The notes: generated by a model from the letters alone, not told the origin. A stretch of DNA of 64,000 bases from IMGVR_UViG_3300026097_000876:186001-250000; one strand, 5' to 3'; positions 35,023-62,267 are shown, counted from the first letter of the stretch. A program made the numbers and translations.

Positions 35023-35527
35023 AGTACCTACTCCACAATATGTTTGTTATAATAAAAATACTGGAGAAATTTTTAGCATTGGACCTAGCATTGACGATGA
35101 ATATTCTTATATTGAAATTGCAGAAGAGCAATCTCAATTATTTAAAAATTTTACAGAAAGAATGGTTGAATGGAAAGTACTGTATAATAAAAGATCTAAA
35201 AAATTTGAACTTCGTAAAGATATAGAAAAAACAGAAAACGAATTTCCTCTTAAAAAAATTACAAAAGCAGTAGATGAATACGCCGATGTTGAATTAATAA
35301 TTGACAAACTAAAAAACTTGTGTTACATTAATATTAATGATCTTCCTGTTAACATAGACAAAGAAATAGAGTTTTTTATAACTAAAGAAAACGATCCACA
35401 TTTTTTGTATCAATCTTTAAAGTTTAATTTAGGAAGTGCTGATAAAATACATATTGAGATAGCACATACATACAGTGTATATTCTAATAATATGTTTGTA
35501 GAGTGTGCTGTAAAGGAGATAGTTTGA
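35009..35527 (+). CDS. Hypothetical protein
   Basis: 172 aa ORF translationally coupled to both neighbours. Confidence 0.6.
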   Translation: MKYIEVPTPQYVCYNKNTGEIFSIGPSIDDEYSYIEIAEEQSQLFKNFTERMVEWKVLYNKRSKKFELRKDIEKTENEFPLKKITKAVDEYADVELIIDKLKNLCYININDLPVNIDKEIEFFITKENDPHFLYQSLKFNLGSADKIHIEIAHTYSVYSNNMFVECAVKEIV

Positions 35528-36426
35528 AATTAAAAATTGCAGAACAAGACATTATCTATTTGTCGTACGACGAACCAAATGCAGAAAAAAATTATGCAGA
35601 CTTGTTATCTAAGGTTCCGTGGGCAAAACGAATTCACGGAGTCAAAGGTTCAGATGCGGCACATAAAGCCTGTGCAGAAATTAGCGAAACTGACAGATTT
35701 ATTACTGTAGACGGTGATAATATTGTTGATCAAAAATTTTTAGATCAAGTCATTGATTTAGATCAACATACTGATTTAAAGAAAAGTGTTATTAGCTGGT
35801 GCGGGCGTAATGTTATTAATGGACTTGTATACGGCAACGGTGGACTTAAATGTTGGCCTAAAGATTATGTTTTAAATATGCGTACACACGAAGCAGCAGA
35901 TCCTAACGATATTAATGCACAAGTTGAATTTTGTTGGGATGCAGAATACATTCAAATGTCTGACTGTTATAGCACAGTACACAACAATGCAAGTCCAAAA
36001 CAAGCGTGGCGAGCAGGTTTTCGTGAAGGTGTAAAACTTGCATTAGACCGAGGCGTAAAAGTAGACAAAGAATTATTTTTACAAAGCCATGAAAAAAATT
36101 TACATATGTTATATATTTGGCTTATGGTAGGATATGATGTTCCGAACGGGCATTTTTCAGTGTATGGTGCCAGAGAAGGACTTATGATGACTATGCTAAG
36201 TGATTGGGATTATGTTCAGGTCCGTGACTTTGATTATTTAGATAGTCATTGGGAGGGTATTAGTAGCATGCCTATGGATGTTCTTTATAGTGAAATTAAT
36301 AATAACGGATTTATGTTAAGAGATGAGTTAGGTATTCCGATTGCACCTGAACCATTATCAGAAGATCAGAGTGAATTTTTTAAAGCAGTTCACCACAGCT
36401 TCGGAAGAGGTAAACATCTTAAATGA
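35524..36426 (+). CDS. Glycosyltransferase-like protein (GT-A, DxD)
   Basis: Start reassigned to TTG 35524 after AAGGAG. Motifs LSYDEPNA, RIHGVKGSDAAH, FITVDGD, AWRAGFREGVKL. Confidence 0.65.
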   Translation: MKLKIAEQDIIYLSYDEPNAEKNYADLLSKVPWAKRIHGVKGSDAAHKACAEISETDRFITVDGDNIVDQKFLDQVIDLDQHTDLKKSVISWCGRNVINGLVYGNGGLKCWPKDYVLNMRTHEAADPNDINAQVEFCWDAEYIQMSDCYSTVHNNASPKQAWRAGFREGVKLALDRGVKVDKELFLQSHEKNLHMLYIWLMVGYDVPNGHFSVYGAREGLMMTMLSDWDYVQVRDFDYLDSHWEGISSMPMDVLYSEINNNGFMLRDELGIPIAPEPLSEDQSEFFKAVHHSFGRGKHLK

Positions 36427-37757
36427 ATAAAAATGAAGTAAAACAAAAATTAGATTCGGTTGGTTGCGGATTTTGTCTAGCTAAATGGACGCAAGTTACA
36501 ATTCATCTTGGATCCGGAATCAATCATAGTTGTCATCATGTCAGAGCACATGCAATTCCATTAAAAGATCTTGCTGACAATCCTAATGTTTTACACAACA
36601 CAGGATTCAAAAAGAATACCAGAAAGCAAATGCTAAACAACGAACGTCCTGATGAATGTGACTATTGTTGGAGAATCGAAGATAATACAGATAAACTTAG
36701 TGACAGAGTATTAAAAAGTGCAGATTCCTGGTCTTGGCCTGAATACGATATAATTAGTAAATCTTCAGGAGACGAGGATGTTTATCCTAAATATGTAGAA
36801 GTCAGTTTTAGTAATGTGTGTAATTTTAAATGTGGGTATTGCGGACCTGCATTTAGCAGCAAGTGGGCTGAAGAAATTAATCAACATGGTCCGTACACAT
36901 TTGATAAAACTAATTGGAAATATAATTTGATTGACGAATATCAACAACAAATTCCTACTAGAGAACATAATCCTTATATTGAAGCATTTTGGAAATGGTT
37001 TCCGGAAGCTGTTGAACACATGCATACCTTTCGAATTACAGGTGGAGAACCATTACTAAGTAAACATACTGACAAAGTTTTACAACATTTATTAGAAAAC
37101 CCCCAACCAGAATTAGAATTTAGTATTAATACTAATGCATGTCCCCCGAATAATTTGTGGAAAGAATTTACTAAAAAAATAAAAGTTTTAGAAGAAAAAA
37201 ACTGTATTAAAAGATTTGTATTATTTGTAAGTGCAGAAGCCAAAGGAAAACAACAAGAATATAACAGACACGGAATGAATTGGCAATTGTTTGTAGATAA
37301 TGTAGAATACTTTCTTGAAAATACTAATGGGCGGCTTAGTTTTATGAGTGCATTTAATATTTTAAGTGTACCAACATTTTTGCCTTTTTTAAAATATGTA
37401 TCTAGTCTCAAAGGAAGATTTGATAATGATGTAAATATTGATATTCCATATGTAAGAAATCCTCATTTTCTAGATTGTATGATTGCAACTGAAGAACTTG
37501 TACAAACATATTTACATCCTTGTCTTAAATTTATGCAAGAAAAAAACTTTGAAGCGTTTGAGATACAAAAATTTGAAAGAATTCTCGAAGATTTAGATGG
37601 TCGTTTTAAAAATCCAGATAAATTTAAACAAATATCAAATGAAGGACGAAGAATGTTTTACGACTGGATTAGAGAACACGATAAGCGTCGAGGAACAAAT
37701 TTTGAAAAAACTTTTCCAGAACTGATAACATTTTATAGAGATTGCTTGTATGTATGA
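36423..37757 (+). CDS. Radical SAM protein with N-terminal Twitch/SPASM-like domain
   Basis: CNFKCGYC motif and TGGEP; N-terminal CLAKW...SCHH...ECDYCW auxiliary cysteines. Confidence 0.85.
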   Translation: MNKNEVKQKLDSVGCGFCLAKWTQVTIHLGSGINHSCHHVRAHAIPLKDLADNPNVLHNTGFKKNTRKQMLNNERPDECDYCWRIEDNTDKLSDRVLKSADSWSWPEYDIISKSSGDEDVYPKYVEVSFSNVCNFKCGYCGPAFSSKWAEEINQHGPYTFDKTNWKYNLIDEYQQQIPTREHNPYIEAFWKWFPEAVEHMHTFRITGGEPLLSKHTDKVLQHLLENPQPELEFSINTNACPPNNLWKEFTKKIKVLEEKNCIKRFVLFVSAEAKGKQQEYNRHGMNWQLFVDNVEYFLENTNGRLSFMSAFNILSVPTFLPFLKYVSSLKGRFDNDVNIDIPYVRNPHFLDCMIATEELVQTYLHPCLKFMQEKNFEAFEIQKFERILEDLDGRFKNPDKFKQISNEGRRMFYDWIREHDKRRGTNFEKTFPELITFYRDCLYV

Positions 37758-38433
37758 TATTGTGTTTATAAGTTATCATGAATCTAATGCAGAACAAAAC
37801 TTTGATAAATTGCATCAAAGATTTAACAATATAGGCGTTTTTGGAGATAGAATAAAACGGGTATCTAATGTTAAGGGAATACATAATGCACATATCGAAG
37901 CTGCTAAGATAGTTAATACAAACTATTTTTATGTAGTCGATGGAGATGCTGATATTGTAAGTGACTTTAAATTTGATTATGAAACTATTGATAGTGATGT
38001 AGTACATGTATATTCCAGTATTAATCCTATTAATAATCTTGAATACGGCTACGGTGGAGTAAAATTACTACCAACACAACTTACTAAAAATATAGATACT
38101 ACTACACACGATATGACCACAAGTATATCAAAAAAATTTAAAGTTTTAGATGAAATATCAAATATTACAGCATTTAATACAGATGAATTTAGCACTTGGC
38201 GTTCGGCATTTAGAGAATGTGCAAAATTATCGAGTAGAACAATACAAGGACAAATCGATGAAGAAACCGAACAAAGACTCAAAATTTGGACAACCGTGGG
38301 ACACGATAGAGACTTCGGTGAACATGCCATTAACGGTGCTAGGGCCGGTATGGAGTTTGGCCTTTCTAACCAGTCTGATATATCATTAATAAACGATTTT
38401 GATTGGCTAAAAGAGCAATTCAATAATGATTAA
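37750..38433 (+). CDS. Glycosyltransferase-like protein, paralogue of 35524
   Basis: ISYHESNA, VKGIHNAH, VVDGDAD, YGYGGVKL, WRSAFRECAKL. Confidence 0.65.
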   Translation: MYDIVFISYHESNAEQNFDKLHQRFNNIGVFGDRIKRVSNVKGIHNAHIEAAKIVNTNYFYVVDGDADIVSDFKFDYETIDSDVVHVYSSINPINNLEYGYGGVKLLPTQLTKNIDTTTHDMTTSISKKFKVLDEISNITAFNTDEFSTWRSAFRECAKLSSRTIQGQIDEETEQRLKIWTTVGHDRDFGEHAINGARAGMEFGLSNQSDISLINDFDWLKEQFNND

Positions 38434-39277
38434 TATCGTTGTTACAAGTAAACCAGTAGATGGACTTCTTTATTATAGTTACGAATACTGTGATATGCTT
38501 AACAAAGCAGGCTATCCTGCTAAGGTTGTTATTATATGTCACCAAAAATTTAGTGTACTAGATTATATGGAAGTCCTAACCACCAAATACACATATGTAG
38601 ATAATGTTGTGTATAACAATTTAAATGTAGGCAATGACGATGTAACACTTGTTATGGGCAGGAGTATGATTACACTGTCTTGGATCAATTACAACGATTA
38701 TACAGAAGAACAAAAACAAACACTGCATAGTGTATTTGCTAATAAAGTAATAAGTGTGTATTCAGAAAATCATCCTGCACAATATCCGCAGGCAGTAGAG
38801 TTTTATAGCCCTAAACAAATTGTAGACCTATGCGACACTGAAGTGTATCCTAATGGCGTAGGAGAACACTTTGAAAAAACAATTAATTTTAGTATATATA
38901 AACCGCACACAGACAACATACAATTTAAACATTTATTTCTAGGAACAAACGACAAATACTACGCAACAGTAGAAAAGGTAATTGACCAATTTCCTGATCA
39001 CGGGATCTTGACATATGACGAAAAGTATGTTAATATTAAAAATAATAACGTATTTGCACCTGTAGGAAATCTAATGGGCATGTTCGAAACATATGTTTAC
39101 ACAAAAGAAACATTTGATCCGGCTCCTAGAATCTTTCAAGAGTGCAAATATTATGGAAAGGATGTGATTTACTTGAGAGACAAAAACATACAAGACGGCG
39201 GCAGTGTGTACTGGAAACGAGATCTAAAAGAACCAGATGTAACAGCAATCATAAATGCTATAAAGGAATTTAAATGA
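38426..39277 (+). CDS. Hypothetical protein (possibly GT-B-like)
   Basis: 283 aa; DPAPRIFQECKYYGK weakly resembles GT-B C-terminal motifs. Confidence 0.45.
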   Translation: MINIVVTSKPVDGLLYYSYEYCDMLNKAGYPAKVVIICHQKFSVLDYMEVLTTKYTYVDNVVYNNLNVGNDDVTLVMGRSMITLSWINYNDYTEEQKQTLHSVFANKVISVYSENHPAQYPQAVEFYSPKQIVDLCDTEVYPNGVGEHFEKTINFSIYKPHTDNIQFKHLFLGTNDKYYATVEKVIDQFPDHGILTYDEKYVNIKNNNVFAPVGNLMGMFETYVYTKETFDPAPRIFQECKYYGKDVIYLRDKNIQDGGSVYWKRDLKEPDVTAIINAIKEFK

Positions 39278-39633
39278 AAATTGATCCAAAATGTCTAAAA
39301 TTTAATACCCCAAAAAATAAAGGTGCGGCATATACTTCTGATGGATTTATGCTGCCCTGCTGTTGGATAGACGATCCGCCAGTTTATAGATATCTTGTAG
39401 AAATGGGTATGAAAGATCCGGAATTAGCATTAGAAAATAACGATTGCTTAGAAGACATTTTTACATCAGATCAATGGGAGAACTTCTTCCAAAAATTATA
39501 CGATGATCCTGATCGGTGTTCATATATGTGTAAGAAAAAATGCGGCGTTGAACTTACCGACGGCGAAACTGAAATTCGTAAAGTAGAAGAAAGACTAGAG
39601 GTTTTAAAACAAAGTGAAGGAAAGAATTACTGA
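39274..39633 (+). CDS. Stand-alone Twitch/SPASM-like Fe-S protein
   Basis: PKC...GFMLPCCW...CSYMCKKKC cysteine pattern; no radical SAM core. Confidence 0.65.
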   Translation: MKIDPKCLKFNTPKNKGAAYTSDGFMLPCCWIDDPPVYRYLVEMGMKDPELALENNDCLEDIFTSDQWENFFQKLYDDPDRCSYMCKKKCGVELTDGETEIRKVEERLEVLKQSEGKNY

Positions 39634-40357
39634 TACCTATGTAAAATATCAGAAAAATTGCAGGATTAATGTCGATACCTCGCATCGTTGTCCCTTTCGG
39701 TGCCCTCAGTGCGTGAGACAAAAGACAATAAGCCAAGATATGATACGTAGAAGTTTTGATTTGGAAGAACATAACTTTCAAAAAATATTAGATTATTACG
39801 ATAATGGTCCTACATTTTGTGGACAAATTTCTGACCCTATCTATCATCCTAGATTTTTAAATTTTTTAAAAATGTGCAATGGACGAAATAGAGCTGTTCG
39901 TATTGCCACAGTAGGTAGTGGTAAAAGCGACGAGTGGTGGGACGAGGCTTATAGCTATGGTCTTGGAGAAAATCAGTGGACTTTCGGAGTAGACGGTATA
40001 GACGAAAAGAGCGAACTGTATCGCGTTGGTAGTAATTTCAAAGATCAATGGCGTCGAATGCAACAGGGTAGAGATCTAGGACATGTAATTGTTTGGCAGT
40101 ATATTATATTTGGTTATAATGAACACGAAATAGATCAGGCAGTAGAAATTGCAAAGAAAGAAGATTTTACTCTGCTTTTTGTTAACACAAACAGGGGATT
40201 TAATCCAGAAAGTGATACCCTGAGAAAGAATGTTAATTTTAAAATAAACAGTCCCGATCCAAAGCATCTTACTGATCGTCTTAAGAAAGAATGGTATGCT
40301 CATACCACAGATGTATTTCAGGCCTGGCGTGATCTTCCTCCTTGGAGTCCGAAATGA
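39614..40357 (+). CDS. Radical SAM protein (core only)
   Basis: CPFRCPQC; FCGQISDPIYHP; FGVDG; WQYIIFGYNEH. Confidence 0.85.
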   Translation: MKERITDTYVKYQKNCRINVDTSHRCPFRCPQCVRQKTISQDMIRRSFDLEEHNFQKILDYYDNGPTFCGQISDPIYHPRFLNFLKMCNGRNRAVRIATVGSGKSDEWWDEAYSYGLGENQWTFGVDGIDEKSELYRVGSNFKDQWRRMQQGRDLGHVIVWQYIIFGYNEHEIDQAVEIAKKEDFTLLFVNTNRGFNPESDTLRKNVNFKINSPDPKHLTDRLKKEWYAHTTDVFQAWRDLPPWSPK

Positions 40358-40923
40358 AAAGTAAAAAGAATAGCCTAGTTAAATGTGAGCATTATCCAAC
40401 ATTATTTTATGATACGCAATCTGATACTTTTGTAAAGTATTATAGTGATCGAGCTCCTTTTGAAAAATGGTGGAGTGTTTATAGAGAGTATCAAAATTTT
40501 GAACATAGAACTGTGCAGGTTTTAGACGTAAATTTCAAAAAGAAATACTTTGTAATGGAGTCAATAAAAGGTATTAATCTTGAGCACGAGATGATTAAAC
40601 TAGATTTTGAGGATACAAAGAAAGTTCTGACACAGACTTTAGAAATTTTTAGTAATAAATTTAGTTTTGCATGCGAAGCTATGCATGACACAGAGATATT
40701 TTTCCATAAAGACTTTCGAACTGAAAATCTCATGTTTGACGAAAATAAAAATGTGAGACTAGTAGACCCTGATAGTTTCAGTGTTTTGCCACTTGATAGA
40801 ATGAATAATTTATTGTTTTTTGGAAGGTACATGGATACTCTTACATCCATTCGAGAACGCCTTAGTTTTGCAGAGCTTACCGAAGAGCAAAAATATCGAT
40901 TAGGAAGAGGATATTTATACTAA
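40354..40923 (+). CDS. Small protein-kinase-fold phosphotransferase (Kdo/RIO/APH-like)
   Basis: FVMESIKG, HKDFRTENLMFD (HxDxxxxN catalytic loop), VRLVDPD; ATG start at 40354 preferred. Confidence 0.65.
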   Translation: MKSKKNSLVKCEHYPTLFYDTQSDTFVKYYSDRAPFEKWWSVYREYQNFEHRTVQVLDVNFKKKYFVMESIKGINLEHEMIKLDFEDTKKVLTQTLEIFSNKFSFACEAMHDTEIFFHKDFRTENLMFDENKNVRLVDPDSFSVLPLDRMNNLLFFGRYMDTLTSIRERLSFAELTEEQKYRLGRGYLY

Positions 40924-41996
40924 TGATTTCTTATGACGGCTGGGATAAGGAGTATCAAGAAAATCGAGAAGAATACTTGGAAGTGTTTGATCGTTTTATG
41001 AGTCAAATGAATTACGAAAATAATGAAGACTGGGAGCGTAGTTTTGCAGAACGTGTAGGTCGTAAACATTGTGTTAGTGTTGCTAGTGCCACAGATGCAC
41101 TACACTTTACGCTATTAGCACACGGTATTGGTACAGACGACGAAGTACTAGTAACAGACTTTAGTTGGATTAGTAGTTCAGCTTGCGTAAGTATGGTAGG
41201 TGCCACTCCAGTATTTTGCGACATTGACTTAGATACATATCATATGAGCTTAGACAGCATACAGCGCATGTACAGCAGTAAGACTAAGGCAATTGTATAT
41301 GTACACCTATTTGGTAACATGACTGACACAAGCGCAATACAAGCGTTCTGTGCAGAAAAAAATATACTGTTTATCGAAGATGCTGCACAGAGTTTAGGTA
41401 GTAGTCTCAACGGTGTTAGAGCAGGCACTATTGGCGATTGCAGTGTGTACAGTTTTAACTCAAACAAAGTTATTGCAGGCATCAACGGCGGCGGCGTTGT
41501 GTTAACCGACAACGAAGATATTGCAAAACGTGTAAAGCAGATTCGCAGACACGGCAAAGACAAAACATTCGACACGCTAGGCTACAACAGTCGCATGTAT
41601 GTGCTTAATGCAGAAATTATTAATCTGCGATTACAACGTGCAGAAGAAAATCAATCAAAGCGTCAAGATATTGCAAAACGTTACAACGAAGCATTTGCAG
41701 AGTTGTCTGTAGTAACACAAGCAATGTCAAACGGATTAAATCACAACTATCACAAATACGTAGTAAGATTCAAAGACAAGGACACTAGAAAGCGTGTTAA
41801 AGACGCCTTAAATGCTAGTATACACTACGAGACTCCGTTGAGTGCTAACGGTATGTACGACACACTACAGTGCAGGAGAGACGCTTGTACAGCGTCTGTG
41901 ACGGCATCTAATACTGTTTTATCGTTGCCGATACACGCTTGGTTAACTGAGGATGAAATAAGTAATATTATCAAACTAGTTAAGGATAACATATGA
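40923..41996 (+). CDS. DegT/DnrJ/EryC1/StrS family PLP-dependent aminotransferase
   Basis: SATDAL, GATPVFCDID, VHLFG, IEDAAQS, SFNSNK (PLP lysine), GGGVV, GYNSRM, LSLPIH. Confidence 0.93.
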   Translation: MISYDGWDKEYQENREEYLEVFDRFMSQMNYENNEDWERSFAERVGRKHCVSVASATDALHFTLLAHGIGTDDEVLVTDFSWISSSACVSMVGATPVFCDIDLDTYHMSLDSIQRMYSSKTKAIVYVHLFGNMTDTSAIQAFCAEKNILFIEDAAQSLGSSLNGVRAGTIGDCSVYSFNSNKVIAGINGGGVVLTDNEDIAKRVKQIRRHGKDKTFDTLGYNSRMYVLNAEIINLRLQRAEENQSKRQDIAKRYNEAFAELSVVTQAMSNGLNHNYHKYVVRFKDKDTRKRVKDALNASIHYETPLSANGMYDTLQCRRDACTASVTASNTVLSLPIHAWLTEDEISNIIKLVKDNI

Positions 41997-42712
41997 TAGA
42001 AGAATTATTTGGTAAAAGAAAACATGTTGTACATTATGATACAGAAATTATTCCTACACGATCCGAAGTAGAAGAAATACTAAGAGTAGGGTATTCTCTA
42101 GCAACATCCAAACAGAAGGCTTATGCCTATAAGTTTTGGATATTAGGACCAAATAAAGAACGCAGTCACATGTTATGGGAAATGGCTGAAGGTAGGAAAA
42201 TTGATGTGGATTACGAAGCATACGGTACTACTACAAAAGATAAAAAATATGTTGCTAATCCCGCTTTGTTCCATCTAAAAAGTTCTCCGTGGACTTTTTT
42301 GGTTACTCCGAGAACTTCGTCCCCTAATCCGCATTTTAAGTATGCATTTGAAACTGCTGGCAGTAAATGGCAGTTAGAAGACAGGGACTTTGTTAATACA
42401 AAAAACAGAGAATCAAATGCCATAGATGTAGGAATGGTGGCAAAAACAATCAGCGGAGCCGCATTTGAAAAAGGTTGGGATGTATCATACAATATCTGTT
42501 TTGAAAACGACAAAACAAAATGGCCAAAGTGTCTTCCATTCATTAGTGACCATGCTACAGGTTTTAGGCCTGTAATGATGATGACCTTAGGAAAAGGAAA
42601 AAAATATTATTATGAAAGATTGATTAGTGACGGCACAATCGCAAATGATCCTAAATATAATGCAGATCCTCCTTTTGAAACTATTTTCGAATTTTTTGAC
42701 GAGAACAAATGA
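41993..42712 (+). CDS. Nitroreductase-fold protein 1
   Basis: KRKHVVHYD, ATSKQKAYAYKFWILGP, IDVGM, MTLGKG. Confidence 0.65.
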   Translation: MIEELFGKRKHVVHYDTEIIPTRSEVEEILRVGYSLATSKQKAYAYKFWILGPNKERSHMLWEMAEGRKIDVDYEAYGTTTKDKKYVANPALFHLKSSPWTFLVTPRTSSPNPHFKYAFETAGSKWQLEDRDFVNTKNRESNAIDVGMVAKTISGAAFEKGWDVSYNICFENDKTKWPKCLPFISDHATGFRPVMMMTLGKGKKYYYERLISDGTIANDPKYNADPPFETIFEFFDENK

Positions 42713-43398
42713 TGGAAAATTATAAGTATGTTTTAGAGTATGATAATTCTGCATTTATTGATCCTACTCATATTGATAATGCATTAGAATATGCTTGGAA
42801 GGTAACTCCGTCAAAACAAAATTTTATGCCTTATAAGGTGCATGTTCTCTCACCCGAAGCTGAAGGGCATAAACAAATTTTATACAACAAAGCACTCATT
42901 CAACAAGCGCGAGGATCAGGAATTAAGATAAAAAATTCTAAAGCCTTGCAAAAATATGATCAGCGATTAAAGAATGATGACATGCAACCTTTTTTTCGTA
43001 ATTTAAAAACAGCTCCGTATGTTTTTATATTTGCACAGCGGGTTGAAGACGAACCTAATCCATTCCAGCAACATAATATCAATTATGGATTAACATATTG
43101 TCAAACAGAGAATAGCGACCCCGGACATGCACACGGTAAAGATATTGCAAGAATTGAAATAGGCATGTTCAGTGCAAATCTTGCATCGCATTTGTTAACT
43201 AATAAGATAGATGTTTCTTTTACACAGTGTTTTCCTGGTGAGCTTGACACTTGGACTGAAAAAGAATTTAAATTTTTAAAAGATGACGTTCTTTTAATTA
43301 TGACGGCAGGCAAAGGCAAAATATATAGAAGAGATCTTAAATCACAAGAAAAAGATCTAAAACCAAATTTTAAAAGAATAGTAAACAAGGAAGTATAA
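42709..43398 (+). CDS. Nitroreductase-fold protein 2
   Basis: AWKVTPSKQNFMPYKVHVL, TAPYVFIF, IEIGMFSANL, MTAGKG. Confidence 0.7.
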   Translation: MMENYKYVLEYDNSAFIDPTHIDNALEYAWKVTPSKQNFMPYKVHVLSPEAEGHKQILYNKALIQQARGSGIKIKNSKALQKYDQRLKNDDMQPFFRNLKTAPYVFIFAQRVEDEPNPFQQHNINYGLTYCQTENSDPGHAHGKDIARIEIGMFSANLASHLLTNKIDVSFTQCFPGELDTWTEKEFKFLKDDVLLIMTAGKGKIYRRDLKSQEKDLKPNFKRIVNKEV

Positions 43399-44078
43399 TG
43401 ATTAAAAAGATTTTAGACAAATGGAAATATGTTCTTGCATTCGATACTGAACACAGAACAGACAAAACTGTTATTAAAGACATAATGCATACAGCTTGGC
43501 AGACAACGCCGAGCAAAAACAGTTTCATGCCTTATAGAGTTCATGTATTTGGCCCAGGAGAAGAAAAGTCAAAAAGAATAATATATGAAACAAGTGCCGC
43601 AAAAGAGAAAAATTCAAACAGCAGAAATTCGAACCCCGATCAATGGGAAGTTAATTCAAATAAAGCAAGTTTATTAACAGCTGAATATATCCTGGTATTC
43701 ACTCCGAGAGCAGAAGATAATCCTAGTCCTTGGCAAATTCATCTACACAACGGCGGGTGCTACATGGATGCATGGTACGAAGACAAATTAAAAAAATATA
43801 GGGCAACAATTTTAGTAGAAGTTGGGTTATTTGCACAAGCAGTCTCTACATTGTGTTTAGAACAAGGTCTGCATACTAACTACATTTCATCATTTGAATC
43901 AGATTTAGAATACTGGAAAGATCTTGACTTTATAAAGCATCCACCTTGTCTAATTATGGGAATAGGTAAGGCTAAGTATTTTCGTAGAGAATGGATGAAA
44001 AAAATCGGATGGGACGAAGGTGATCATAAACCGAGCTTCAGCAGTGTAGTTAATTTCCATGGAATTGATACCGAATGA
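43398..44078 (+). CDS. Nitroreductase-fold protein 3
   Basis: AWQTTPSKNSFMPYRVHVFGP, VEVGLFAQAV...GLHTNYI, MGIGK. Confidence 0.7.
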   Translation: MIKKILDKWKYVLAFDTEHRTDKTVIKDIMHTAWQTTPSKNSFMPYRVHVFGPGEEKSKRIIYETSAAKEKNSNSRNSNPDQWEVNSNKASLLTAEYILVFTPRAEDNPSPWQIHLHNGGCYMDAWYEDKLKKYRATILVEVGLFAQAVSTLCLEQGLHTNYISSFESDLEYWKDLDFIKHPPCLIMGIGKAKYFRREWMKKIGWDEGDHKPSFSSVVNFHGIDTE

Positions 44079-44713
44079 TGTCAACCGATCAAATGGAAAA
44101 TAATTTTTTTAACCGAACTGAAGTAAATGTGGATATTGCATATAGATGTGCTCTTGACTGTCCGAGATGTCAACGTTGGAGGGTCTATAGAAAGCATAAC
44201 AAGAAAGTTCCAGGTTATGACATGACCATGACTGAGTTTAAAAGAATTGTCTCACACTTTACTGAAGTTAGTTTTTGCGGACAGTATTCTGATCCAATTC
44301 ATCATCCGAAATTTATTGATTTTCTAAAACTATGCAAGGATAAAGGTATAAAAGCATCTGTGCATAATGCATCATCTGCTAAATCAGAAGATTGGTATAT
44401 TCAAGCATTTAAAGCAAATCCCAATGCTCAATGGTTTTTTGGAATAGACGGGTTGCCTCATCAGAGCCATCAGTATAGAATTAATCAAGATGGCGTAAAA
44501 CTTTATAATATTATGCTAGAAGCAAAAAAGTATTTAAAAACAAAACCAATATGGCAGTACATCATTTTTAATTACAATGAAAATCATGTCGAAGAAGCTA
44601 AAAAAATGGCTGACGACGACGACGTCTATTTTATGTTAGTAAGATCTTCTAGGTGGGACCGAGACGATCCATTAATGCCTACTCTTAAAGAATATAAGTT
44701 AAATAGATTATGA
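44075..44713 (+). CDS. Radical SAM protein (core only), paralogue of 39614
   Basis: CALDCPRC; FCGQYSDPIHHP; FGIDG; WQYIIFNYNENH. Confidence 0.85.
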   Translation: MMSTDQMENNFFNRTEVNVDIAYRCALDCPRCQRWRVYRKHNKKVPGYDMTMTEFKRIVSHFTEVSFCGQYSDPIHHPKFIDFLKLCKDKGIKASVHNASSAKSEDWYIQAFKANPNAQWFFGIDGLPHQSHQYRINQDGVKLYNIMLEAKKYLKTKPIWQYIIFNYNENHVEEAKKMADDDDVYFMLVRSSRWDRDDPLMPTLKEYKLNRL

Positions 44714-45045
44714 CTGTAGAATTAAAACCAAAATGTTTTGAAGATCAGCAGATGGCTGTAACTAATAGAGGTCATTTAATACCTTGTTGTTATTGCGATA
44801 CTCAGCATACTATGAATGATTTAGAATTTCAAAAACTATTGAAAGTTAGCAAAATAAGCGACTATAACAGTATAGAAGAAATTTTGAATACAAACGAATG
44901 GAAAGAGTTTTATAAAAATCTGCAACAAAATATTGGGCCTCGTGCTTGTCAGACTGTCTGTGCTAAAAATAAAAAAGACCCGTTAAATATTAAAGAAATA
45001 GAAGACGGTCGAACAGGAAAAATTATACATACTAGAATTGCATAG
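44710..45045 (+). CDS. Stand-alone Twitch/SPASM-like Fe-S protein, paralogue of 39274
   Basis: PKC...GHLIPCCYCD...ACQTVC. Confidence 0.65.
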   Translation: MTVELKPKCFEDQQMAVTNRGHLIPCCYCDTQHTMNDLEFQKLLKVSKISDYNSIEEILNTNEWKEFYKNLQQNIGPRACQTVCAKNKKDPLNIKEIEDGRTGKIIHTRIA

Positions 45046-45064
45046 CAACATATGGAAGATTAAA

Positions 45065-45736
45065 ATGTTAGAAGAGTTAATGCTGAAAAGGCAACAAGTA
45101 AGATTTTTTGATAGAGAAAACTATCCTAGCGAAAAAATAATTTACTCAATCTTAGAAAAAACTTATCAAATAGTTCCATCTAAACAAAATTTAGTGCCTT
45201 ACAAAGTCCATGTGTTAGGTCCAAGCATGGAAGAACATAAAAGAGAGTTATATCTTTTATCTTCTAAACAACAGCTAGGTGACAAGTTAAATTATAACGA
45301 ACTTGCCAAACGTAATAGCGGAAATACACAGTTGTTGGCTCCTTATGTTCTACTTTTTGAAAAAAGATTACCAGAACCTAACGATTTTGTAAAAAAAGAA
45401 ATGCTCCTAGGACATAAATTTAATGAATGTTTGCCCGAACAACAAAGAAATCAAAGGATAGCTACAGCTATCGAGGTGGGTATGTTTACAGCAATGCTAT
45501 CTGGGTTTTGTATGGAGGAAGATATTTCTCTAAGTTATATAGGATGCCTTCCTGGAAACCCAGAAACCTACAAAAATAATCCTTCTGTCAATTTTGATTT
45601 TATCGAACAACACATTTTTTTAGGGATAGGCATAGGTTACCAAGACTATTCTATCGAAGAAAATCTTAGATTATCTCGTTTACAAAATTGTGGAGAGATA
45701 AAACCTAAAAGTGATAATGTAATTGTTAAACATTAA
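45065..45736 (+). CDS. Nitroreductase-fold protein 4
   Basis: KRQQVRFFD, VPSKQNLVPYKVHVLGP, IEVGMF, GIGIGY; ATG 45065 preferred over TTG 45038. Confidence 0.7.
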   Translation: MLEELMLKRQQVRFFDRENYPSEKIIYSILEKTYQIVPSKQNLVPYKVHVLGPSMEEHKRELYLLSSKQQLGDKLNYNELAKRNSGNTQLLAPYVLLFEKRLPEPNDFVKKEMLLGHKFNECLPEQQRNQRIATAIEVGMFTAMLSGFCMEEDISLSYIGCLPGNPETYKNNPSVNFDFIEQHIFLGIGIGYQDYSIEENLRLSRLQNCGEIKPKSDNVIVKH

Positions 45737-45798: not shown

Positions 45799-46635
45799 AT
45801 GTTTCTAACCCTTGAAGATTTAAAAGGTTCAGAATATCGTACAGTAGACTTTTATATGACAAAAAGTTGTAATAAGAGTTGCCATTATTGTACTGCATGG
45901 ACTCTTGAAATGCGTAATCTTGATGTTGACATGGATTTTTTGCGTACTATTTTAGAAGGTCTTGCTCCTTATAAAACACGTATTTGTTTGCTCGGCGGTG
46001 AACCTGGACTTGTTAAGAACTTAAGAGAAGTTATTGCCGAAATTAAAAAGTATCCCAATCTAGTAGTACAGGTACTTTCTAACAGTCTTATACGTAAATT
46101 TTATCCAGAAGTATTAGAAGATCCTGAGATTATTTACATCGAACATTTAGTGTTGGACTTTTACGAAGATCGAATTGAAAAGTTAGGTAACTATGATTTC
46201 TTTGAACCTAATGATCTAAACAATTATAATCTTATAATTGAAACACCTGGATACTTTGATTACAGAGACAAACATGATTTGTCTTATCTTATGCACAAAA
46301 ATACAGAATTTAAAGAATATAATTCACGCTCTCCGGATTTCTTTTCAGATCATAAAATTGTACAAGCGCCAGAAATTGAAAGACGAGTATGTGCTAAGTT
46401 TCCGCAAGTTCCTGTGTTTGATTTTGAAATACAAAAAATTAGACATTGTAGCAGGAAAGTTATTAACGGTAGCCGTCAATTTGATGTTACTAAAGAAAAT
46501 ATTGAAAAGATGATGAACTACGAACTTTTTGAATTCGAAAACTATTGCAAAGGTTGTATGGATATTATTCCTCCGAGGCCAGTAGCACGTAGATTAGAAA
46601 TATTAGAAAAAATAGCATTAGAAGATATCACATGA
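45799..46635 (+). CDS. Radical SAM protein with C-terminal auxiliary cysteines
   Basis: CNKSCHYC, LGGEPG; C-terminal C...HC...CKGC. Confidence 0.85.
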   Translation: MFLTLEDLKGSEYRTVDFYMTKSCNKSCHYCTAWTLEMRNLDVDMDFLRTILEGLAPYKTRICLLGGEPGLVKNLREVIAEIKKYPNLVVQVLSNSLIRKFYPEVLEDPEIIYIEHLVLDFYEDRIEKLGNYDFFEPNDLNNYNLIIETPGYFDYRDKHDLSYLMHKNTEFKEYNSRSPDFFSDHKIVQAPEIERRVCAKFPQVPVFDFEIQKIRHCSRKVINGSRQFDVTKENIEKMMNYELFEFENYCKGCMDIIPPRPVARRLEILEKIALEDIT

Positions 46636-48095
46636 AGTTTTATGCAGTAGCCTTAAATATGCACGATCATAATACATATGACGGTGTAACACACTATCAA
46701 CTAGAAAGACACACCCGTGCTAAACATAATCTAAATTATAAAAATGTTCATGATCCAGAACCGAGTAAACGTTTTTTTGATAATTTTGTAAAGACTAATG
46801 ATAAAGTACTTTGCTTTACTGTTTCTAATCTAGGACAAGAATTTGTATTAGACCGGATTGAAAAAAAATTCGGAAAAGACTTTTTAAACTTCAGACCTAG
46901 CCATATCTGGGATTGTTATCATACCGATGATTTTTATTATATCGATCATCATCAAAGTCATGCTACCTATGCTCTTCTAAGTTCAGGATTTCCGGAAAGT
47001 GACATTCTTGCTATCGACGGCAGAGGTTGGCAATTTAATTGTATTTTTGTTAACAAAGAAGGAAGAATAAAAGATCTTACAGATGAATTATCTATTGGCG
47101 GACTTTGGAATAGGCTATCGCAAGATCTTGGTTTTGGATATTTAGGCGCAGGTAAAGTAATGGGTCTTGCTGGTTACGGTAAGTATGATCATAGGGTTCA
47201 CGCTATGTTAGAAGTATATCTCACTAATGATAATAACCTTCCTAACTGGTATAAAAAAATTATCGACAGCTGCAACAAAGAAGATATTGCTTTTACTCTA
47301 CAATATGTTACAGAAGAATTAATTAAAAAATATGTATATCCTCTCAAAACTAGTGACAATTTGTGTGTAGCAGGCGGAGTAGCATATAATGGCTACATGA
47401 ATGAGGAATTTACTAAACATTATAAAAACGTACATGTACCGCCTGCTGTTGGTGACGAAGGTCAGGCAATAGGTACTTACATGCATGCCGAATATGTAGT
47501 AAACGGAAATGTACACATTCCTTGTGTATACTCTGGTGTTGAACATAAGTACACACTACCAGATACATTTGAAGATTTGAATATCCCTAAACTGGCACAA
47601 CAAATAGCAGATGGCAAAATAGTAGGATGGTTCCAAGGAAAGAGTGAAAGTGGTAATAGAGCACTAGGCAATCGTAGTATACTTGCAGATCCACGCAATC
47701 CCGATATTAAAGATATTATTAACAGTAAGATTAAACTACGTGAAGACTTTAGACCGTTTGCTCCTAGCGTACTAGAAGAACATTATACAGAATATTTTGA
47801 TACTAATCAGCCATCGCCTTATATGAGCAGGATTGTAAAAGTTAAAGGTAACATCATACCGGGCGTAACTCACGTAGACAGTACAGCAAGGATTCAAACT
47901 GTTAATAAAACACAGAATCAAAAATTTTATGATTTAATTAACGAATTTTATAAAATTACAGGAGTTCCTATGTTACTTAACACAAGTTTTAACTGTCAAG
48001 AACCTATTGTAGAAACTCCGCACGAAGCATATGAAACTTATAACAAAACTTCTTTGGATATTCTTGTTATTAATGATAAAGTGATTGAAAAATGA
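46632..48095 (+). CDS. Carbamoyltransferase (NodU/CmcH/TobZ family)
   Basis: HHQSHA, IDGRG, GKVMGLAGYG, AGGVAYN, GDEGQAIG, RALGNRSILADP, REDFRPFAPS, HVDSTARIQTV, LLNTSFN. Confidence 0.95.
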   Translation: MKFYAVALNMHDHNTYDGVTHYQLERHTRAKHNLNYKNVHDPEPSKRFFDNFVKTNDKVLCFTVSNLGQEFVLDRIEKKFGKDFLNFRPSHIWDCYHTDDFYYIDHHQSHATYALLSSGFPESDILAIDGRGWQFNCIFVNKEGRIKDLTDELSIGGLWNRLSQDLGFGYLGAGKVMGLAGYGKYDHRVHAMLEVYLTNDNNLPNWYKKIIDSCNKEDIAFTLQYVTEELIKKYVYPLKTSDNLCVAGGVAYNGYMNEEFTKHYKNVHVPPAVGDEGQAIGTYMHAEYVVNGNVHIPCVYSGVEHKYTLPDTFEDLNIPKLAQQIADGKIVGWFQGKSESGNRALGNRSILADPRNPDIKDIINSKIKLREDFRPFAPSVLEEHYTEYFDTNQPSPYMSRIVKVKGNIIPGVTHVDSTARIQTVNKTQNQKFYDLINEFYKITGVPMLLNTSFNCQEPIVETPHEAYETYNKTSLDILVINDKVIEK

Positions 48096-61985: not shown

Positions 61986-62267
61986 TTATTTATATTTTAG
62001 GAAAGGACATGCAAGAACGAAATAGGAAAGCTCTTTTGGATCTTCAAATCCGACTCTTACAATGTTATCTATTTTATTTTCGCTAGTAACTCCTACGCTT
62101 TTACTAAGAAAATATCTTTTTTTAAGATTAGCTTCTATCCATTTTTCTAATGCTTTTTCTATATTATATGTGTAAGCTAAGTCAATAGTTTCAAGGTGGG
62201 GAGGCTGATGAGAAAGCCTCCTTATCTTAAATAAATTTTCTGGTGTAGTAGCAGACTTAATTGACAT
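61986..62267 (-). CDS. Hypothetical phage protein
   Basis: Start reassigned to ATG 62267 (MSIKSATT...), overlapping the VWA gene stop; the longer track ORF overlaps the VWA gene. Confidence 0.55.
   Translation of the reverse strand: MSIKSATTPENLFKIRRLSHQPPHLETIDLAYTYNIEKALEKWIEANLKKRYFLSKSVGVTSENKIDNIVRVGFEDPKELSYFVLACPFLKYK

What the first reader, a model, noticed from the sequence alone, without database searches (positions are those of the whole stretch)
39274..45045. Two split radical SAM enzymes with separately encoded Twitch/SPASM subunit, in opposite gene orders
Seen: 39274 (Cys-rich, GxxxPCC) precedes rSAM core 39614, while the paralogous core 44075 precedes the paralogous small protein 44710. 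The cores lack C-terminal auxiliary cysteines. Known: Twitch/SPASM domains are normally fused C-terminally. The reversed order in one pair and the ATGA overlap in the other argue for real two-subunit enzymes rather than frameshifts.
Basis: partly seen in the sequence, partly recalled or inferred. Interest (0 to 1): 0.7.

Follow-up and report, generated by a model that had tools for sequence, protein, structure and literature searches.

The report
Two-piece radical SAM enzymes in phage
A large marine T4-like phage encodes two radical SAM enzymes whose iron-sulfur "Twitch" domain is a separate small protein, placed before the catalytic gene in one pair and after it in the other; this split design recurs in hundreds of uncultured marine phage sequences and has not been studied.

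Summary

**The genes.** The window holds two paralogous gene pairs:
- Pair A: smallA (39274-39633), then coreA (39614-40357).
- Pair B: coreB (44075-44713), then smallB (44710-45045).

**Conservation.**
- The split is conserved in more than 40 divergent viral or MAG loci.
- The junctions differ: overlaps of 1-25 nt, or a 2-nt gap, in both frame relations. Frameshift errors and programmed frameshifting are therefore unlikely.
- Natural fusions exist at the C-terminus (9 seen) and at the N-terminus (2 seen).

**The small protein.**
- It has five invariant Cys in a CX11GX4C(C)...CX3C pattern.
- It passes the Pfam SPASM threshold.
- Its closest structural matches are BtrN's Twitch region and stand-alone SPASM-annotated proteins.
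- It is predicted to dock on its core: ipSAE 0.92, against 0.23 for the best control.
- The cysteine count fits one auxiliary cluster, so it is Twitch-type, not a 7-Cys SPASM domain.

**Context.** The pair sits in a conserved cassette of a glycosyltransferase-like gene, the pair, a DegT aminotransferase, another rSAM and a carbamoyltransferase. This lies in the phage's host-recognition cluster and suggests BtrN/DesII-like sugar tailoring. That function is inferred, not shown.

**Verdict.** This is a new variant of a known kind and is moderately interesting. Iron-sulfur binding, complex formation and substrate are all untested.

The parts
39274..39633 (+). smallA: 119-aa stand-alone Twitch-like subunit, upstream partner of coreA. 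Cys7...G24-x4-C29C30...C82x3C86.
   Evidence: ORF. Homologous to smallB. Aligns with the family's invariant Cys. 45% identical to the N-terminal domain of the natural fusion P0187.
39614..40357 (+). coreA: 247-aa radical SAM catalytic core (CX3CX2C) with no auxiliary-cluster domain. GTG start, 20-nt overlap with smallA.
   Evidence: About 300 homologues, and almost all of the 120 listed are 223-270 aa stand-alone proteins (one is 313 aa). 53% identical to the C-terminal part of the fusion P0187.
44075..44713 (+). coreB: 212-aa radical SAM catalytic core, paralogue of coreA.
   Evidence: Invariant C25/C29/C32, G69, S72, D73, W160, Q161 and R193. Predicted to bind smallB.
44710..45045 (+). smallB: 111-aa stand-alone Twitch-like subunit, downstream partner of coreB (ATGA overlap). 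C9, G21-x4-C26C27, C80x3C84.
   Evidence: Pfam SPASM PF13186, 24.5 bits against a cut-off of 21.5. AF2 model with pLDDT 86. Best PDB matches are the BtrN Twitch region. AFDB hits are SPASM-annotated proteins. Complex ipSAE 0.92 against 0.23 for the best control.
38426..39277 (+). 283-aa glycosyltransferase-like gene (lead only). It lies immediately upstream of the pair in about half of the related loci, whichever order the pair has.
   Evidence: Synteny. ESM Atlas feature hits to GT4/GT-B clusters at 0.92. No Pfam hit.
40923..41996 (+). DegT/DnrJ/EryC1-family PLP sugar aminotransferase, a conserved neighbour of the pair.
   Evidence: Pfam PF01041, E 1.7e-86. Present in 23 of 51 related loci.
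36423..37757 (+). Fused comparator: a 444-aa radical SAM protein with an N-terminal twitch domain (NF033640 member).
   Evidence: NCBIfam NF033640, 310 bits against a cut-off of 170.
45799..46635 (+). Fourth radical SAM gene of the cassette (278 aa), a conserved neighbour.
   Evidence: Pfam PF04055, 31.6 bits. Present in 15 of 51 loci.
46632..48095 (+). Carbamoyltransferase (NodU/CmcH type), a cassette member.
   Evidence: Pfam PF16861 (E 6.6e-67) and PF02543. Synteny.
41993..44078 (+). Three tandem nitroreductase-like paralogues upstream of coreB. A fourth lies at 45038-45736.
   Evidence: Pfam PF00881: 25.9 bits, above the 23.5 cut-off, for 43398-44078; 18.7 bits, below it, for 41993-42712; none for 42709-43398. 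Paralogy by BLASTP. Homologues in 13-15 of 51 loci.

Best explanation
Each pair encodes a heteromeric radical SAM enzyme.

**Catalytic core.** The roughly 210-250-aa core is a minimal partial TIM barrel. Its CX3CX2C motif holds the SAM-cleaving [4Fe-4S] cluster.

**Twitch subunit.** The roughly 110-aa partner is a free-standing Twitch domain.
- It adds its beta-hairpin to the core's first strand and packs against the core's C-terminal strand.
- It places one auxiliary Fe-S cluster at the mouth of the barrel. The likely ligands are the Cys before the hairpin (C9), one of the C26/C27 pair after it, and the CX3C (C80/C84) after the last helix.
- This is the same position the C-terminal Twitch domain occupies in BtrN, SkfB or MoaA.

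**Expression.** The two genes have overlapping stop and start codons, so they are probably translationally coupled. Because the module is a separate polypeptide, gene order is free: small then core (pair A), core then small (pair B). Relatives have re-fused it at either end.

**Function.** Function is inferred from the conserved cassette (glycosyltransferase-like gene, the pair, DegT aminotransferase, a further rSAM, carbamoyltransferase) inside the tail-fibre / host-recognition cluster of a T4-like myophage. It is most likely radical oxidation or rearrangement of a sugar or aminosugar. One possibility is a BtrN-like alcohol-to-ketone step that feeds the aminotransferase, as part of building an unusual glycan.

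**What is shown and what is inferred.**
- Shown: gene structure, conservation, homology.
- Predicted: fold, docking.
- Inferred: Fe-S ligation, substrate class.
For: **Split is conserved.**
- Among the roughly 45 viral and MAG loci where both parts were found, about 40 have them as separate genes. Overlaps are 1, 4, 8, 11, 14, 16, 17, 19, 20 and 25 nt, or a 2-nt gap, in both +1 and +2 frame relations.
- Pelagibacter phage Mosig has the same split (Mosig_00084/85).

**Family size.**
- The profile search found 583 clusters at 50% identity.
- Of the top 150, 139 are 75-164-aa stand-alone proteins.
- Six are C-terminal fusions and two are N-terminal fusions to a coreA-like rSAM.

**Small-protein features.**
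- Invariant C9, P25, C26, C27, W64, F67, C80 and C84.
- Pfam SPASM hit above the gathering score for smallB, and 15 of 29 family members match at E <= 0.01.

**Fold.**
- The small model (pLDDT 86) best matches BtrN residues 163-239 (Z 3.0; Foldseek rank 1-2).
- It also matches AFDB '4Fe4S-binding SPASM domain' proteins (E 2.7e-4, TM 0.65).
- The fused homologue model (pLDDT 85) aligns end to end with SuiB, MoaA, SkfB, BlsE, PqqE, DesII, anSME and BtrN at Z 14-17.6. Most rSAMs without such a domain (NifB, most PFL-AE rows) align only to about residue 213.

**Predicted complex, coreB + smallB.**
- ipSAE 0.92 against 0.23 for the best of 3 controls.
- In the tool's calibration that mark was reached by 58 of 80 solved complexes and 2 of 110 mismatched pairs.
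- Runs agree on at least 97% of contacts, and partner pLDDT is at least 87.

**Co-divergence.**
- Core and small distances correlate at r = 0.70, reached by 0 of 2000 permutations.
- Cognate assignment beats swapped assignment in 6 of 7 genomes that carry two pairs.

**Context.** Cassette synteny, DegT and carbamoyltransferase, and T4-like baseplate and tail genes upstream.
Against: - No experiment exists. Fe-S binding, stoichiometry and activity are all unmeasured.
- The small model's PDB matches are weak on their own (Z 3.0; Foldseek E 1.9).
- The complex predictor may score high from memory of fused SPASM/Twitch structures, and my own alignments were used, so its calibration holds only roughly.
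- Only pair B was folded as a complex.
- Co-divergence can arise from linkage alone.
- Five invariant Cys are one more than a 4-ligand cluster needs, and the role of the extra one is unexplained.
- The sugar-substrate idea rests only on neighbours. Structural relatives include peptide maturases as well as sugar enzymes.
- The glycosyltransferase assignments are language-model leads.
Confidence: 0.75

Rival explanations
1. The pairs are broken versions of fused genes: pseudogenes or assembly or sequencing frameshifts. In that case only a truncated core, or nothing functional, is made.
For: Fused homologues exist in the same family. The two genes of each pair are in different frames and overlap.
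Against: - The split recurs in about 40 loci from many samples, with many different junctions and both frame relations. It is also in a cultured phage.
- Almost all of the 120 closest coreA homologues are 223-270 aa stand-alone proteins.
- 139 of the top 150 small-family clusters are stand-alone.
- Both halves keep their invariant residues.
- Compared with the fusion P0187, pair A has about 50 nt of extra junction sequence carrying a stop, a GAGG and a start. That is not a 1-nt slip.
Confidence: 0.03
2. A programmed ribosomal frameshift or a coupling event joins the two ORFs into one polypeptide, so the enzyme is effectively a fused SPASM/Twitch rSAM.
For: The genes have short overlaps in different frames.
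Against: - There is no conserved slippery site.
- Overlap lengths and frame relations vary between orthologous pairs.
- One pair has a 2-nt gap.
- Every downstream gene has its own start codon at or next to the junction.
- In the core-then-small pairs the upstream stop overlaps the downstream ATG, the classic termination-reinitiation layout.
Confidence: 0.03
3. The small Cys-rich protein is not a subunit. It is either the substrate of the rSAM (a RiPP-like precursor) or an independent small metal-binding or redox protein.
For: Small Cys-rich ORFs next to rSAM genes are often precursor peptides (general knowledge). In P0199 and in L046 3621-4676 the small domain is fused to a non-rSAM, glycosyltransferase-like domain. 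So it can exist away from a core in cis.
Against: - It matches the SPASM profile and the Twitch CX9-15GX4C hairpin motif.
- Its fold matches Twitch/SPASM.
- In fused relatives it occupies the Twitch position on the barrel.
- The cores lack any auxiliary domain of their own, while their best structural relatives all have one.
- The predicted interface is a beta-sheet extension with 135-142 confident contacts.
- Fusions at either end of the core exist.
Confidence: 0.07
4. The small protein is a true subunit but carries no Fe-S cluster. It may hold Zn, or its Cys may be purely structural, and it acts only as a lid or substrate-binding cap.
For: Cluster content cannot be read from sequence. The motif is CX3C rather than BtrN's CX2C. 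There is an odd fifth invariant Cys.
Against: The pattern of one Cys before the hairpin, one after it and two after the last helix is exactly the BtrN ligation pattern described in PMC6231123. All five Cys are invariant across 23-55% identical sequences.
Confidence: 0.08

Closest known systems
BtrN (butirosin 2-deoxy-scyllo-inosamine dehydrogenase; PDB 4M7T/4M7S), the founding Twitch-domain rSAM
   Same: - It is a compact rSAM core plus one auxiliary cluster.
- Its ligand pattern is one Cys before the hairpin, one after it and two after the last helix (PMC6231123).
- It is the best PDB match of the small subunit, at BtrN residues 163-239.
- It works with a DegT-family aminotransferase in its pathway (my own knowledge), and a DegT gene is a conserved neighbour here.
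   Different: BtrN is one polypeptide with a C-terminal Twitch domain; here the Twitch is a separate gene. Sequence identity is only about 17-20%. The motif is CX3C instead of CX2C, and there is an extra invariant Cys. No shared substrate has been shown.
SPASM-domain rSAM maturases (anSME, SuiB, CteB, PqqE)
   Same: There is a Pfam PF13186 match. The fused homologue aligns with them end to end at Z 15-17.6.
   Different: They carry the 7-Cys motif and two auxiliary clusters. This family has five invariant Cys and lacks CX2CX5CX3C. They are single chains and often have an RRE domain, which is absent here.
NCBIfam NF033640 'N_Twi_rSAM' (twitch domain at the N-terminus); a member lies in the window at 36423-37757
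   Same: The domain order of Twitch then core matches gene pair A and the fusions P0187 and P0250. smallB hits the model's N-terminal positions 11-73 (E 3.8e-4).
   Different: It is a fused 400-450-aa protein. The scores of the pair are far below the family cut-off (19.7 and 18.1 bits against 170). hhalign of the family profiles against the neighbour found nothing significant. It is not the same family.
Pelagibacter phage Mosig EXVC030M genes Mosig_00084 / Mosig_00085
   Same: They are an orthologous split core-then-small pair (56% and 45% identity) with an 8-nt overlap, in the same cassette.
   Different: They are annotated only as 'putative molybdenum cofactor biosynthesis enzyme' and 'hypothetical protein'. 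The split Twitch nature is not noted. Mosig has one pair, and no small-then-core pair was seen.
Stand-alone '4Fe4S-binding SPASM domain-containing protein' entries in UniProt/AlphaFold DB (e.g. A0A2D6LTL6, 115 aa; A0A2D7ZE04, 114 aa)
   Same: Same size and same predicted fold (TM 0.62-0.65, E about 3e-4). They show that free-standing SPASM/Twitch modules are already in the databases.
   Different: They carry automatic names only. No partner, gene order or function is recorded, and I found no paper on them.

Membership tests
Radical SAM superfamily (cores) | CX3CX2C motif for the SAM-binding [4Fe-4S] cluster | tested here: met
   C25, C29 and C32 are invariant in 29 cores, and the motif is present in both window cores.
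Radical SAM superfamily (cores) | Pfam PF04055 at or above the gathering score | tested here: not met
   coreA scores 27.3 bits and coreB 19.4 bits against a cut-off of 29.5. These are sub-threshold but specific hits, and PHROG 21308 'radical SAM' matches at E 3e-18 and 8e-13.
Radical SAM superfamily (cores) | [quoted passage not shown] | tested here: met
   The model of the fused homologue L032 (52% identical to coreB) matches solved rSAM structures at Z 14-17.6, and 179 Foldseek hits have E <= 0.001. This is a prediction and was made on a homologue.
Twitch domain (small proteins) | CX9-15GX4C motif spanning a beta-hairpin | tested here: met
   smallB has CX11GX4C. The Gly is conserved in at least 90% of members and P-C-C is invariant. 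smallA has CX16GX4C, one residue over the published range. Hairpin strands fall at about residues 15-17 and 22-24 of the model.
Twitch domain (small proteins) | Hairpin followed by helices, then two further Cys ligands after the last helix (BtrN pattern) | tested here: met
   Helices to 78-84 carry the invariant C80 and C84. The pattern is as described in PMC6231123. The spacing is CX3C, not BtrN's CX2C.
Twitch domain (small proteins) | Structural similarity to solved Twitch/SPASM domains | tested here: inconclusive
   On its own the small model gives only a weak match: BtrN is rank 1 but at Z 3.0 and Foldseek E 1.9. Support is stronger elsewhere: AFDB SPASM-annotated proteins at E 2.7e-4 and TM 0.65, and the fused homologue aligns through this domain with Twitch/SPASM enzymes.
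Twitch domain (small proteins) | Packs on the rSAM barrel next to the active site | tested here: met
   In the predicted complex the small strand 14-20 pairs with the core strand 16-23. ipSAE is 0.92 against 0.23 for the best control; the mark was reached by 58 of 80 solved and 2 of 110 mismatched pairs; runs agree on at least 97% of contacts; partner pLDDT is at least 87. This is a prediction only.
Twitch domain (small proteins) | Binds one auxiliary Fe-S cluster | not testable with these tools
   This needs Fe/S analysis and EPR or Mossbauer spectroscopy.
SPASM domain proper (two auxiliary clusters) | Seven-Cys motif CX9-15GX4C-gap-CX2CX5CX3C-gap-C | tested here: not met
   Only five Cys are invariant and there is no CX2CX5CX3C block. 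Pfam PF13186 still matches (24.5 bits against 21.5; 15 of 29 members), because that model also covers the Twitch half.
NCBIfam NF033640 N_Twi_rSAM | Score at or above the family cut-off of 170 bits | tested here: not met
   smallB scores 19.7 bits and coreA 18.1 bits. Only 3 of 29 small proteins hit at all. The neighbouring gene 36423-37757 is a member at 310 bits.
BtrN/DesII-like sugar-modifying rSAM (function) | Acts on a sugar or aminocyclitol, coupled to a DegT-family aminotransferase | not testable with these tools
   Only context is available: DegT, carbamoyltransferase and glycosyltransferase-like neighbours are conserved.

The most novel reading that the evidence does not exclude
The free-standing Twitch protein may be a portable iron-sulfur module rather than just a detached domain.

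It has been shuffled repeatedly within this phage family:
- placed before or after the core;
- re-fused at either end of the core, with at least 8 architecture changes on the core tree;
- in some phages fused instead to a glycosyltransferase-like domain (P0199, L046).

If so, split-gene intermediates of this type could be the route by which N-terminal-Twitch radical SAM enzymes arose from C-terminal ones. The module might also physically bridge the radical SAM core to the glycosyltransferase in a phage glycan-tailoring complex.
Probability: 0.25. Interest if true: 0.7.

Novelty: new variant of a known kind. Interest (0 to 1): 0.55.

Why it matters
**For radical SAM enzymology.**
- The roles of auxiliary clusters in SPASM/Twitch enzymes are still debated.
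- They are hard to study because all clusters sit in one chain, and papers in the library develop cluster-selective 57Fe labelling for exactly this reason (PMC10337720, listed).
- A naturally split enzyme would let the SAM cluster and the auxiliary cluster be expressed, labelled, mutated and titrated on separate polypeptides.
- Cognate and swapped partners could be compared directly.

**For protein evolution.** The family shows one domain in four arrangements (split in both orders, fused at both ends) within one clade. It is a clean natural example of domain permutation through gene fission and fusion.

**For phage biology.** The pair marks a conserved and abundant enzyme cassette of unknown product in the host-recognition cluster of marine T4-like phages, including a cultured SAR11 phage.

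Tried and rejected
- **PDB sequence search.** A profile of the small family against PDB sequences found nothing significant; the best hit had E 0.58 and was unrelated.
- **Comparison with the N_Twi_rSAM neighbour.** hhalign of the small and core profiles against it gave no significant alignment. I do not claim homology to that family beyond a weak HMM hit.
- **Combined alignment.** A MAFFT alignment of fused, core and small rows misaligned the small proteins (A3) and was not used. A5 (fused plus cores) was used instead.
It was rebuilt without that row as A2.
  - The search for related loci with A2 failed for lack of a conserved stretch, so A4 (cores) was used for the genome scan.
- **GenBank phages.** Only Mosig has smallB-like sequence, and none has smallA-like sequence.
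- **Sequencing runs.** Only one run holds the region. It is probably the source sample and is kept as contigs, so laying reads would add no independent check and was not done.
- **Literature.** Searches for split or stand-alone SPASM/Twitch proteins or an N-terminal twitch found no description. That is absence in this library only.
- **Not run for lack of jobs.** The complex of pair A and the swapped pairs could not be run, because the complex job is capped at one.
- **Rejected readings.** Frameshift artefact, programmed frameshift and RiPP precursor; see the rival explanations.

Full report
**What is in the sequence.**

- smallA, 39274-39633, 119 aa;
- coreA, 39614-40357, 247 aa;
- coreB, 44075-44713, 212 aa;
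- smallB, 44710-45045, 111 aa.

coreA starts at a GTG. This is the first start after an in-frame stop at 39605-39607, has GAGG 12 nt upstream, and overlaps smallA by 20 nt. The public protein collection holds the same 247-aa product, so an independent gene caller made the same call (P0001). coreB and smallB overlap in ATGA.

The cores are paralogues (32% identity, E 5e-38), and so are the small proteins (23%, E 6e-9). Both cores have CX3CX2C and no cysteines in their C-terminal halves.

**Where it lies.**

The window belongs to an IMG/VR viral contig. The same sequence sits in a 262-kb viral contig.

Upstream are T4-type baseplate and tail genes: a gp6-like wedge protein (E 3.5e-291), a gp5-like hub-lysozyme and tail-fibre proteins. 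There is also a 4986-aa ORF.

The only GenBank phage with DNA or protein similarity in this region is Pelagibacter phage Mosig, family Kyanoviridae. The enzyme block therefore sits in what a pelagimyophage study calls the hypervariable 'host recognition cluster'. That study notes radical SAM gene cassettes coming and going there (PMC7029224).

**Is the split real?**

I fetched relatives of both cores from viral contigs and from prokaryote genome assemblies. I then located both parts by tblastn and ORF tracing.

- Among the roughly 45 loci where both parts were found, about 40 have them as separate, adjacent genes on the same strand.
- Most are core then small. Small then core occurs in the window, L005, L006, L011/L018, L020 and L037. 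Several phages carry tandem pairs.
- The junctions differ from locus to locus. Overlaps are 1, 4, 8, 11, 14, 16, 17, 19, 20 and 25 nt, or there is a 2-nt gap. Both frame relations occur, and each downstream gene has its own start at the junction.
- Mosig has the same split with an 8-nt overlap. Its genes are annotated as a MoaA-like enzyme plus a hypothetical protein.
- Almost all of the 120 closest coreA homologues are 223-270 aa.

This pattern is not what sequencing errors, pseudogenes or a programmed frameshift would give. It is the usual layout of translationally coupled cistrons.

**Fused relatives exist at both ends.**

Single ORFs with the core followed by the small domain occur in L005 (324 aa), L032-34/L042 (333 aa) and L036 (308 aa).

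A profile of the small family was scored against 1.84 billion representative proteins. It found 583 clusters at E <= 0.001. The top 150 break down as follows:

| Class | Count | Examples |
|---|---|---|
| Stand-alone, 75-164 aa | 139 | - |
| Core with C-terminal small domain | 6 | P0155, P0173, P0210, P0222, P0224, P0245 (checked) |
| Small domain at the N-terminus of a coreA-like rSAM | 2 | P0187, P0250 |
| Small domain fused to an unrelated domain | 1 | P0199 |
| Small domain followed by a tail with no radical SAM motif | 2 | P0252, P0256 |

P0187 is 45% identical to smallA and 53% identical to coreA.

On a maximum-likelihood tree of 38 cores the architecture label changes at least 8 times.
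- Clade A (98/97 support) holds the three small-then-core pairs and the two N-terminal fusions.
- Clade B holds core-then-small pairs interleaved with C-terminal fusions, plus scattered small-then-core exceptions.

**What the small protein is.**

- *Sequence.* Thirty homologues share invariant C9, P25, C26, C27, W64, F67, C80 and C84 (smallB numbering) and a nearly invariant G21. That gives CX11GX4C(C)...CX3C. The published Twitch/SPASM signature is CX9-15GX4C spanning a beta-hairpin. In BtrN the ligands are one Cys before the hairpin, one after it and two after the following helix. Twitch is defined as the truncated form that binds one cluster (PMC6231123). The family fits the Twitch pattern but lacks the CX2CX5CX3C block of a true SPASM domain.
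- *Profiles.* smallB passes Pfam SPASM (24.5 bits against 21.5), and 15 of 29 members match at E <= 0.01.
- *Fold of the small protein.* The AF2 model (pLDDT 86) has the hairpin and the helices. Its best PDB match by two aligners is BtrN, specifically BtrN residues 163-239. The scores are weak (Z 3.0; Foldseek E 1.9).
- *Broader structure libraries.* In AlphaFold DB nearly all of the top 30 matches are '4Fe4S-binding SPASM domain-containing proteins', many of them 85-190-aa stand-alone entries (best E 2.7e-4, TM 0.65). The ESM Atlas returns viral clusters only, both stand-alone and fused.
- *Fold of a fused homologue.* The model of L032 (pLDDT 85) aligns over residues 1-320 with SuiB, MoaA, SkfB, BlsE, PqqE, DesII, anSME and BtrN at Z 14-17.6. 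Most rSAMs without such a domain (NifB, most PFL-activase rows) align only to about residue 213.

The small module therefore occupies the Twitch/SPASM position.

**Do the two chains bind?**

One complex job was available, and I used it on coreB plus smallB with family alignments.
- ipSAE was 0.92, against 0.23 for the best of three controls.
- In the tool's calibration that mark was reached by 58 of 80 solved complexes and 2 of 110 mismatched pairs.
- The runs agree on at least 97% of contacts, and partner pLDDT is at least 87.
- Residues 14-20 of the small protein pair with the core's first strand (16-23). Other contacts involve core residues 46-72, 176-193 and the C-terminal tail.

The tool warns that such a pass can reflect memory of solved fused enzymes, and that my own alignments weaken the calibration. 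It supports binding but does not show it.

Independently, core-core and small-small distances correlate across 33 pairs (r = 0.70, reached by 0 of 2000 permutations). In 6 of 7 genomes with two pairs the cognate assignment fits better than the swapped one; for the window it is 0.82 against -0.56. Linkage alone could produce this. It does show that each small gene has travelled with its adjacent core since before the A/B duplication.

**Likely mechanism and function.**

- *Mechanism (predicted).* The enzyme is a heteromeric Twitch-type radical SAM enzyme. The core cleaves SAM at its CX3CX2C cluster. The small subunit completes the sheet, caps the barrel and supplies one auxiliary cluster.
- *Function (inferred from context only).*
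  - A 283-aa gene (38426-39277) lies immediately upstream of the pair in 26 of 51 loci, whichever order the pair has. It has no Pfam hit, and language-model features point to GT4-type glycosyltransferases.
  - A DegT-family aminotransferase (E 1.7e-86), a further rSAM and a carbamoyltransferase follow.
  - Other loci carry a GT-A-like gene instead.
  - Nitroreductase-like paralogues are frequent neighbours.
  - A recent cyanophage paper lists an AHBA-synthase/DegT-like gene, an rSAM and an inosamine amidinotransferase together (PMC12801897).
- *Reading.* This resembles sugar or aminocyclitol tailoring, in which Twitch enzymes such as BtrN or DesII act beside aminotransferases. I put roughly 0.35-0.4 on that substrate class. 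A peptide substrate is not excluded, because structural relatives include peptide maturases.

**Comparison with what is known, and novelty.**

- The parts are known kinds: a radical SAM core and a Twitch module.
- An N-terminal twitch is already a curated architecture (NF033640), and a full member lies 1.5 kb upstream at 36423-37757 (310 bits). The pairs here are not members of that family (about 18-20 bits against 170; hhalign negative).
- Free-standing SPASM-annotated proteins already exist in UniProt under automatic names.
- What I did not find in the searchable literature is any description of a radical SAM enzyme whose Twitch/SPASM domain is a separate subunit, or of its permutable gene order.
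- The family is essentially viral. Among the genomes of 185,579 prokaryote species, 12 loci were confirmed as relatives. Eight of them are close relatives, and all eight again carry the split pair. All but three of the 12 are on MAG contigs under 12 kb. Among 50,697 phage records only Mosig has it.

I rate it a new variant of a known kind, with interest about 0.55. It is a useful natural tool for separating the two clusters experimentally and a clean case of domain permutation by fission and fusion. It is not a new principle.

**Limits.**
- Nothing here measures iron, binding or activity.
- Only pair B was modelled as a complex.
- The tree is rooted on one distant outgroup with a long branch, so the direction of change (fission or fusion) is open.
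- The glycosyltransferase labels are leads only.

Noticed in passing
window 36423-37757 (+): A complete fused radical SAM protein with an N-terminal twitch domain (NCBIfam NF033640, 310 bits). It is flanked by two paralogous genes of unknown function (35503-36426 and 37750-38433; 29% identity, E 5e-24) that have no Pfam hit.
   Followed up: partly
P0199 (352 aa) and L046:3621-4676: The small Twitch-like domain is fused to a non-radical-SAM domain with weak glycosyltransferase (GT8 / Nucleotid_trans) likeness. The same GT-A-like gene lies next to the pair in 12 of 51 loci. It largely replaces the GT-like 283-aa gene found in the other loci; only L001 (Mosig) has both.
   Followed up: partly
window 41993-44078 and 45038-45736 (+): Four paralogous nitroreductase-like genes (23-33% identity to each other) bracket pair B. 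Only one passes the Pfam cut-off. Homologues occur in 13-15 of 51 related loci. Their role (flavin redox partner or tailoring enzyme) is unknown.
   Followed up: partly
window 11045-26005 (+): A single 4986-aa ORF lies between the baseplate genes and the tail-fibre-like genes. It is presumably a giant structural or fibre protein and was not analysed.
   Followed up: no
window 40342-40923 (+): A 193-aa ORF directly after coreA has weak protein-kinase / phosphotransferase-like Pfam hits (Pkinase E 3.4e-5, below the cut-off). Its TTG start overlaps the end of coreA.
   Followed up: no
L013, L014, L026-L031: Tandem duplications (core-small-core-small) occur in several marine viral contigs. L005 carries a fused core+small gene immediately followed by a split small-then-core pair.
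   Followed up: partly
L045 (Hyphomicrobiales MAG contig, 227,718 bp): This is the only long 'cellular' contig with a close split pair. It could be a misbinned large phage contig or a prophage, and I did not examine it.
   Followed up: no
window 62257-63573 (-): A 438-aa HNH endonuclease-family ORF (phrog_1314, E 1.4e-115) lies on the minus strand. Coding strand and GC skew change sign after about 48.7 kb.
   Followed up: no
G000 /: The 72-kb viral record is rated only 14% complete by CheckV. Identical sequence lies on contigs of 262 kb and 332 kb. This suggests an unusually large myophage genome.
   Followed up: no
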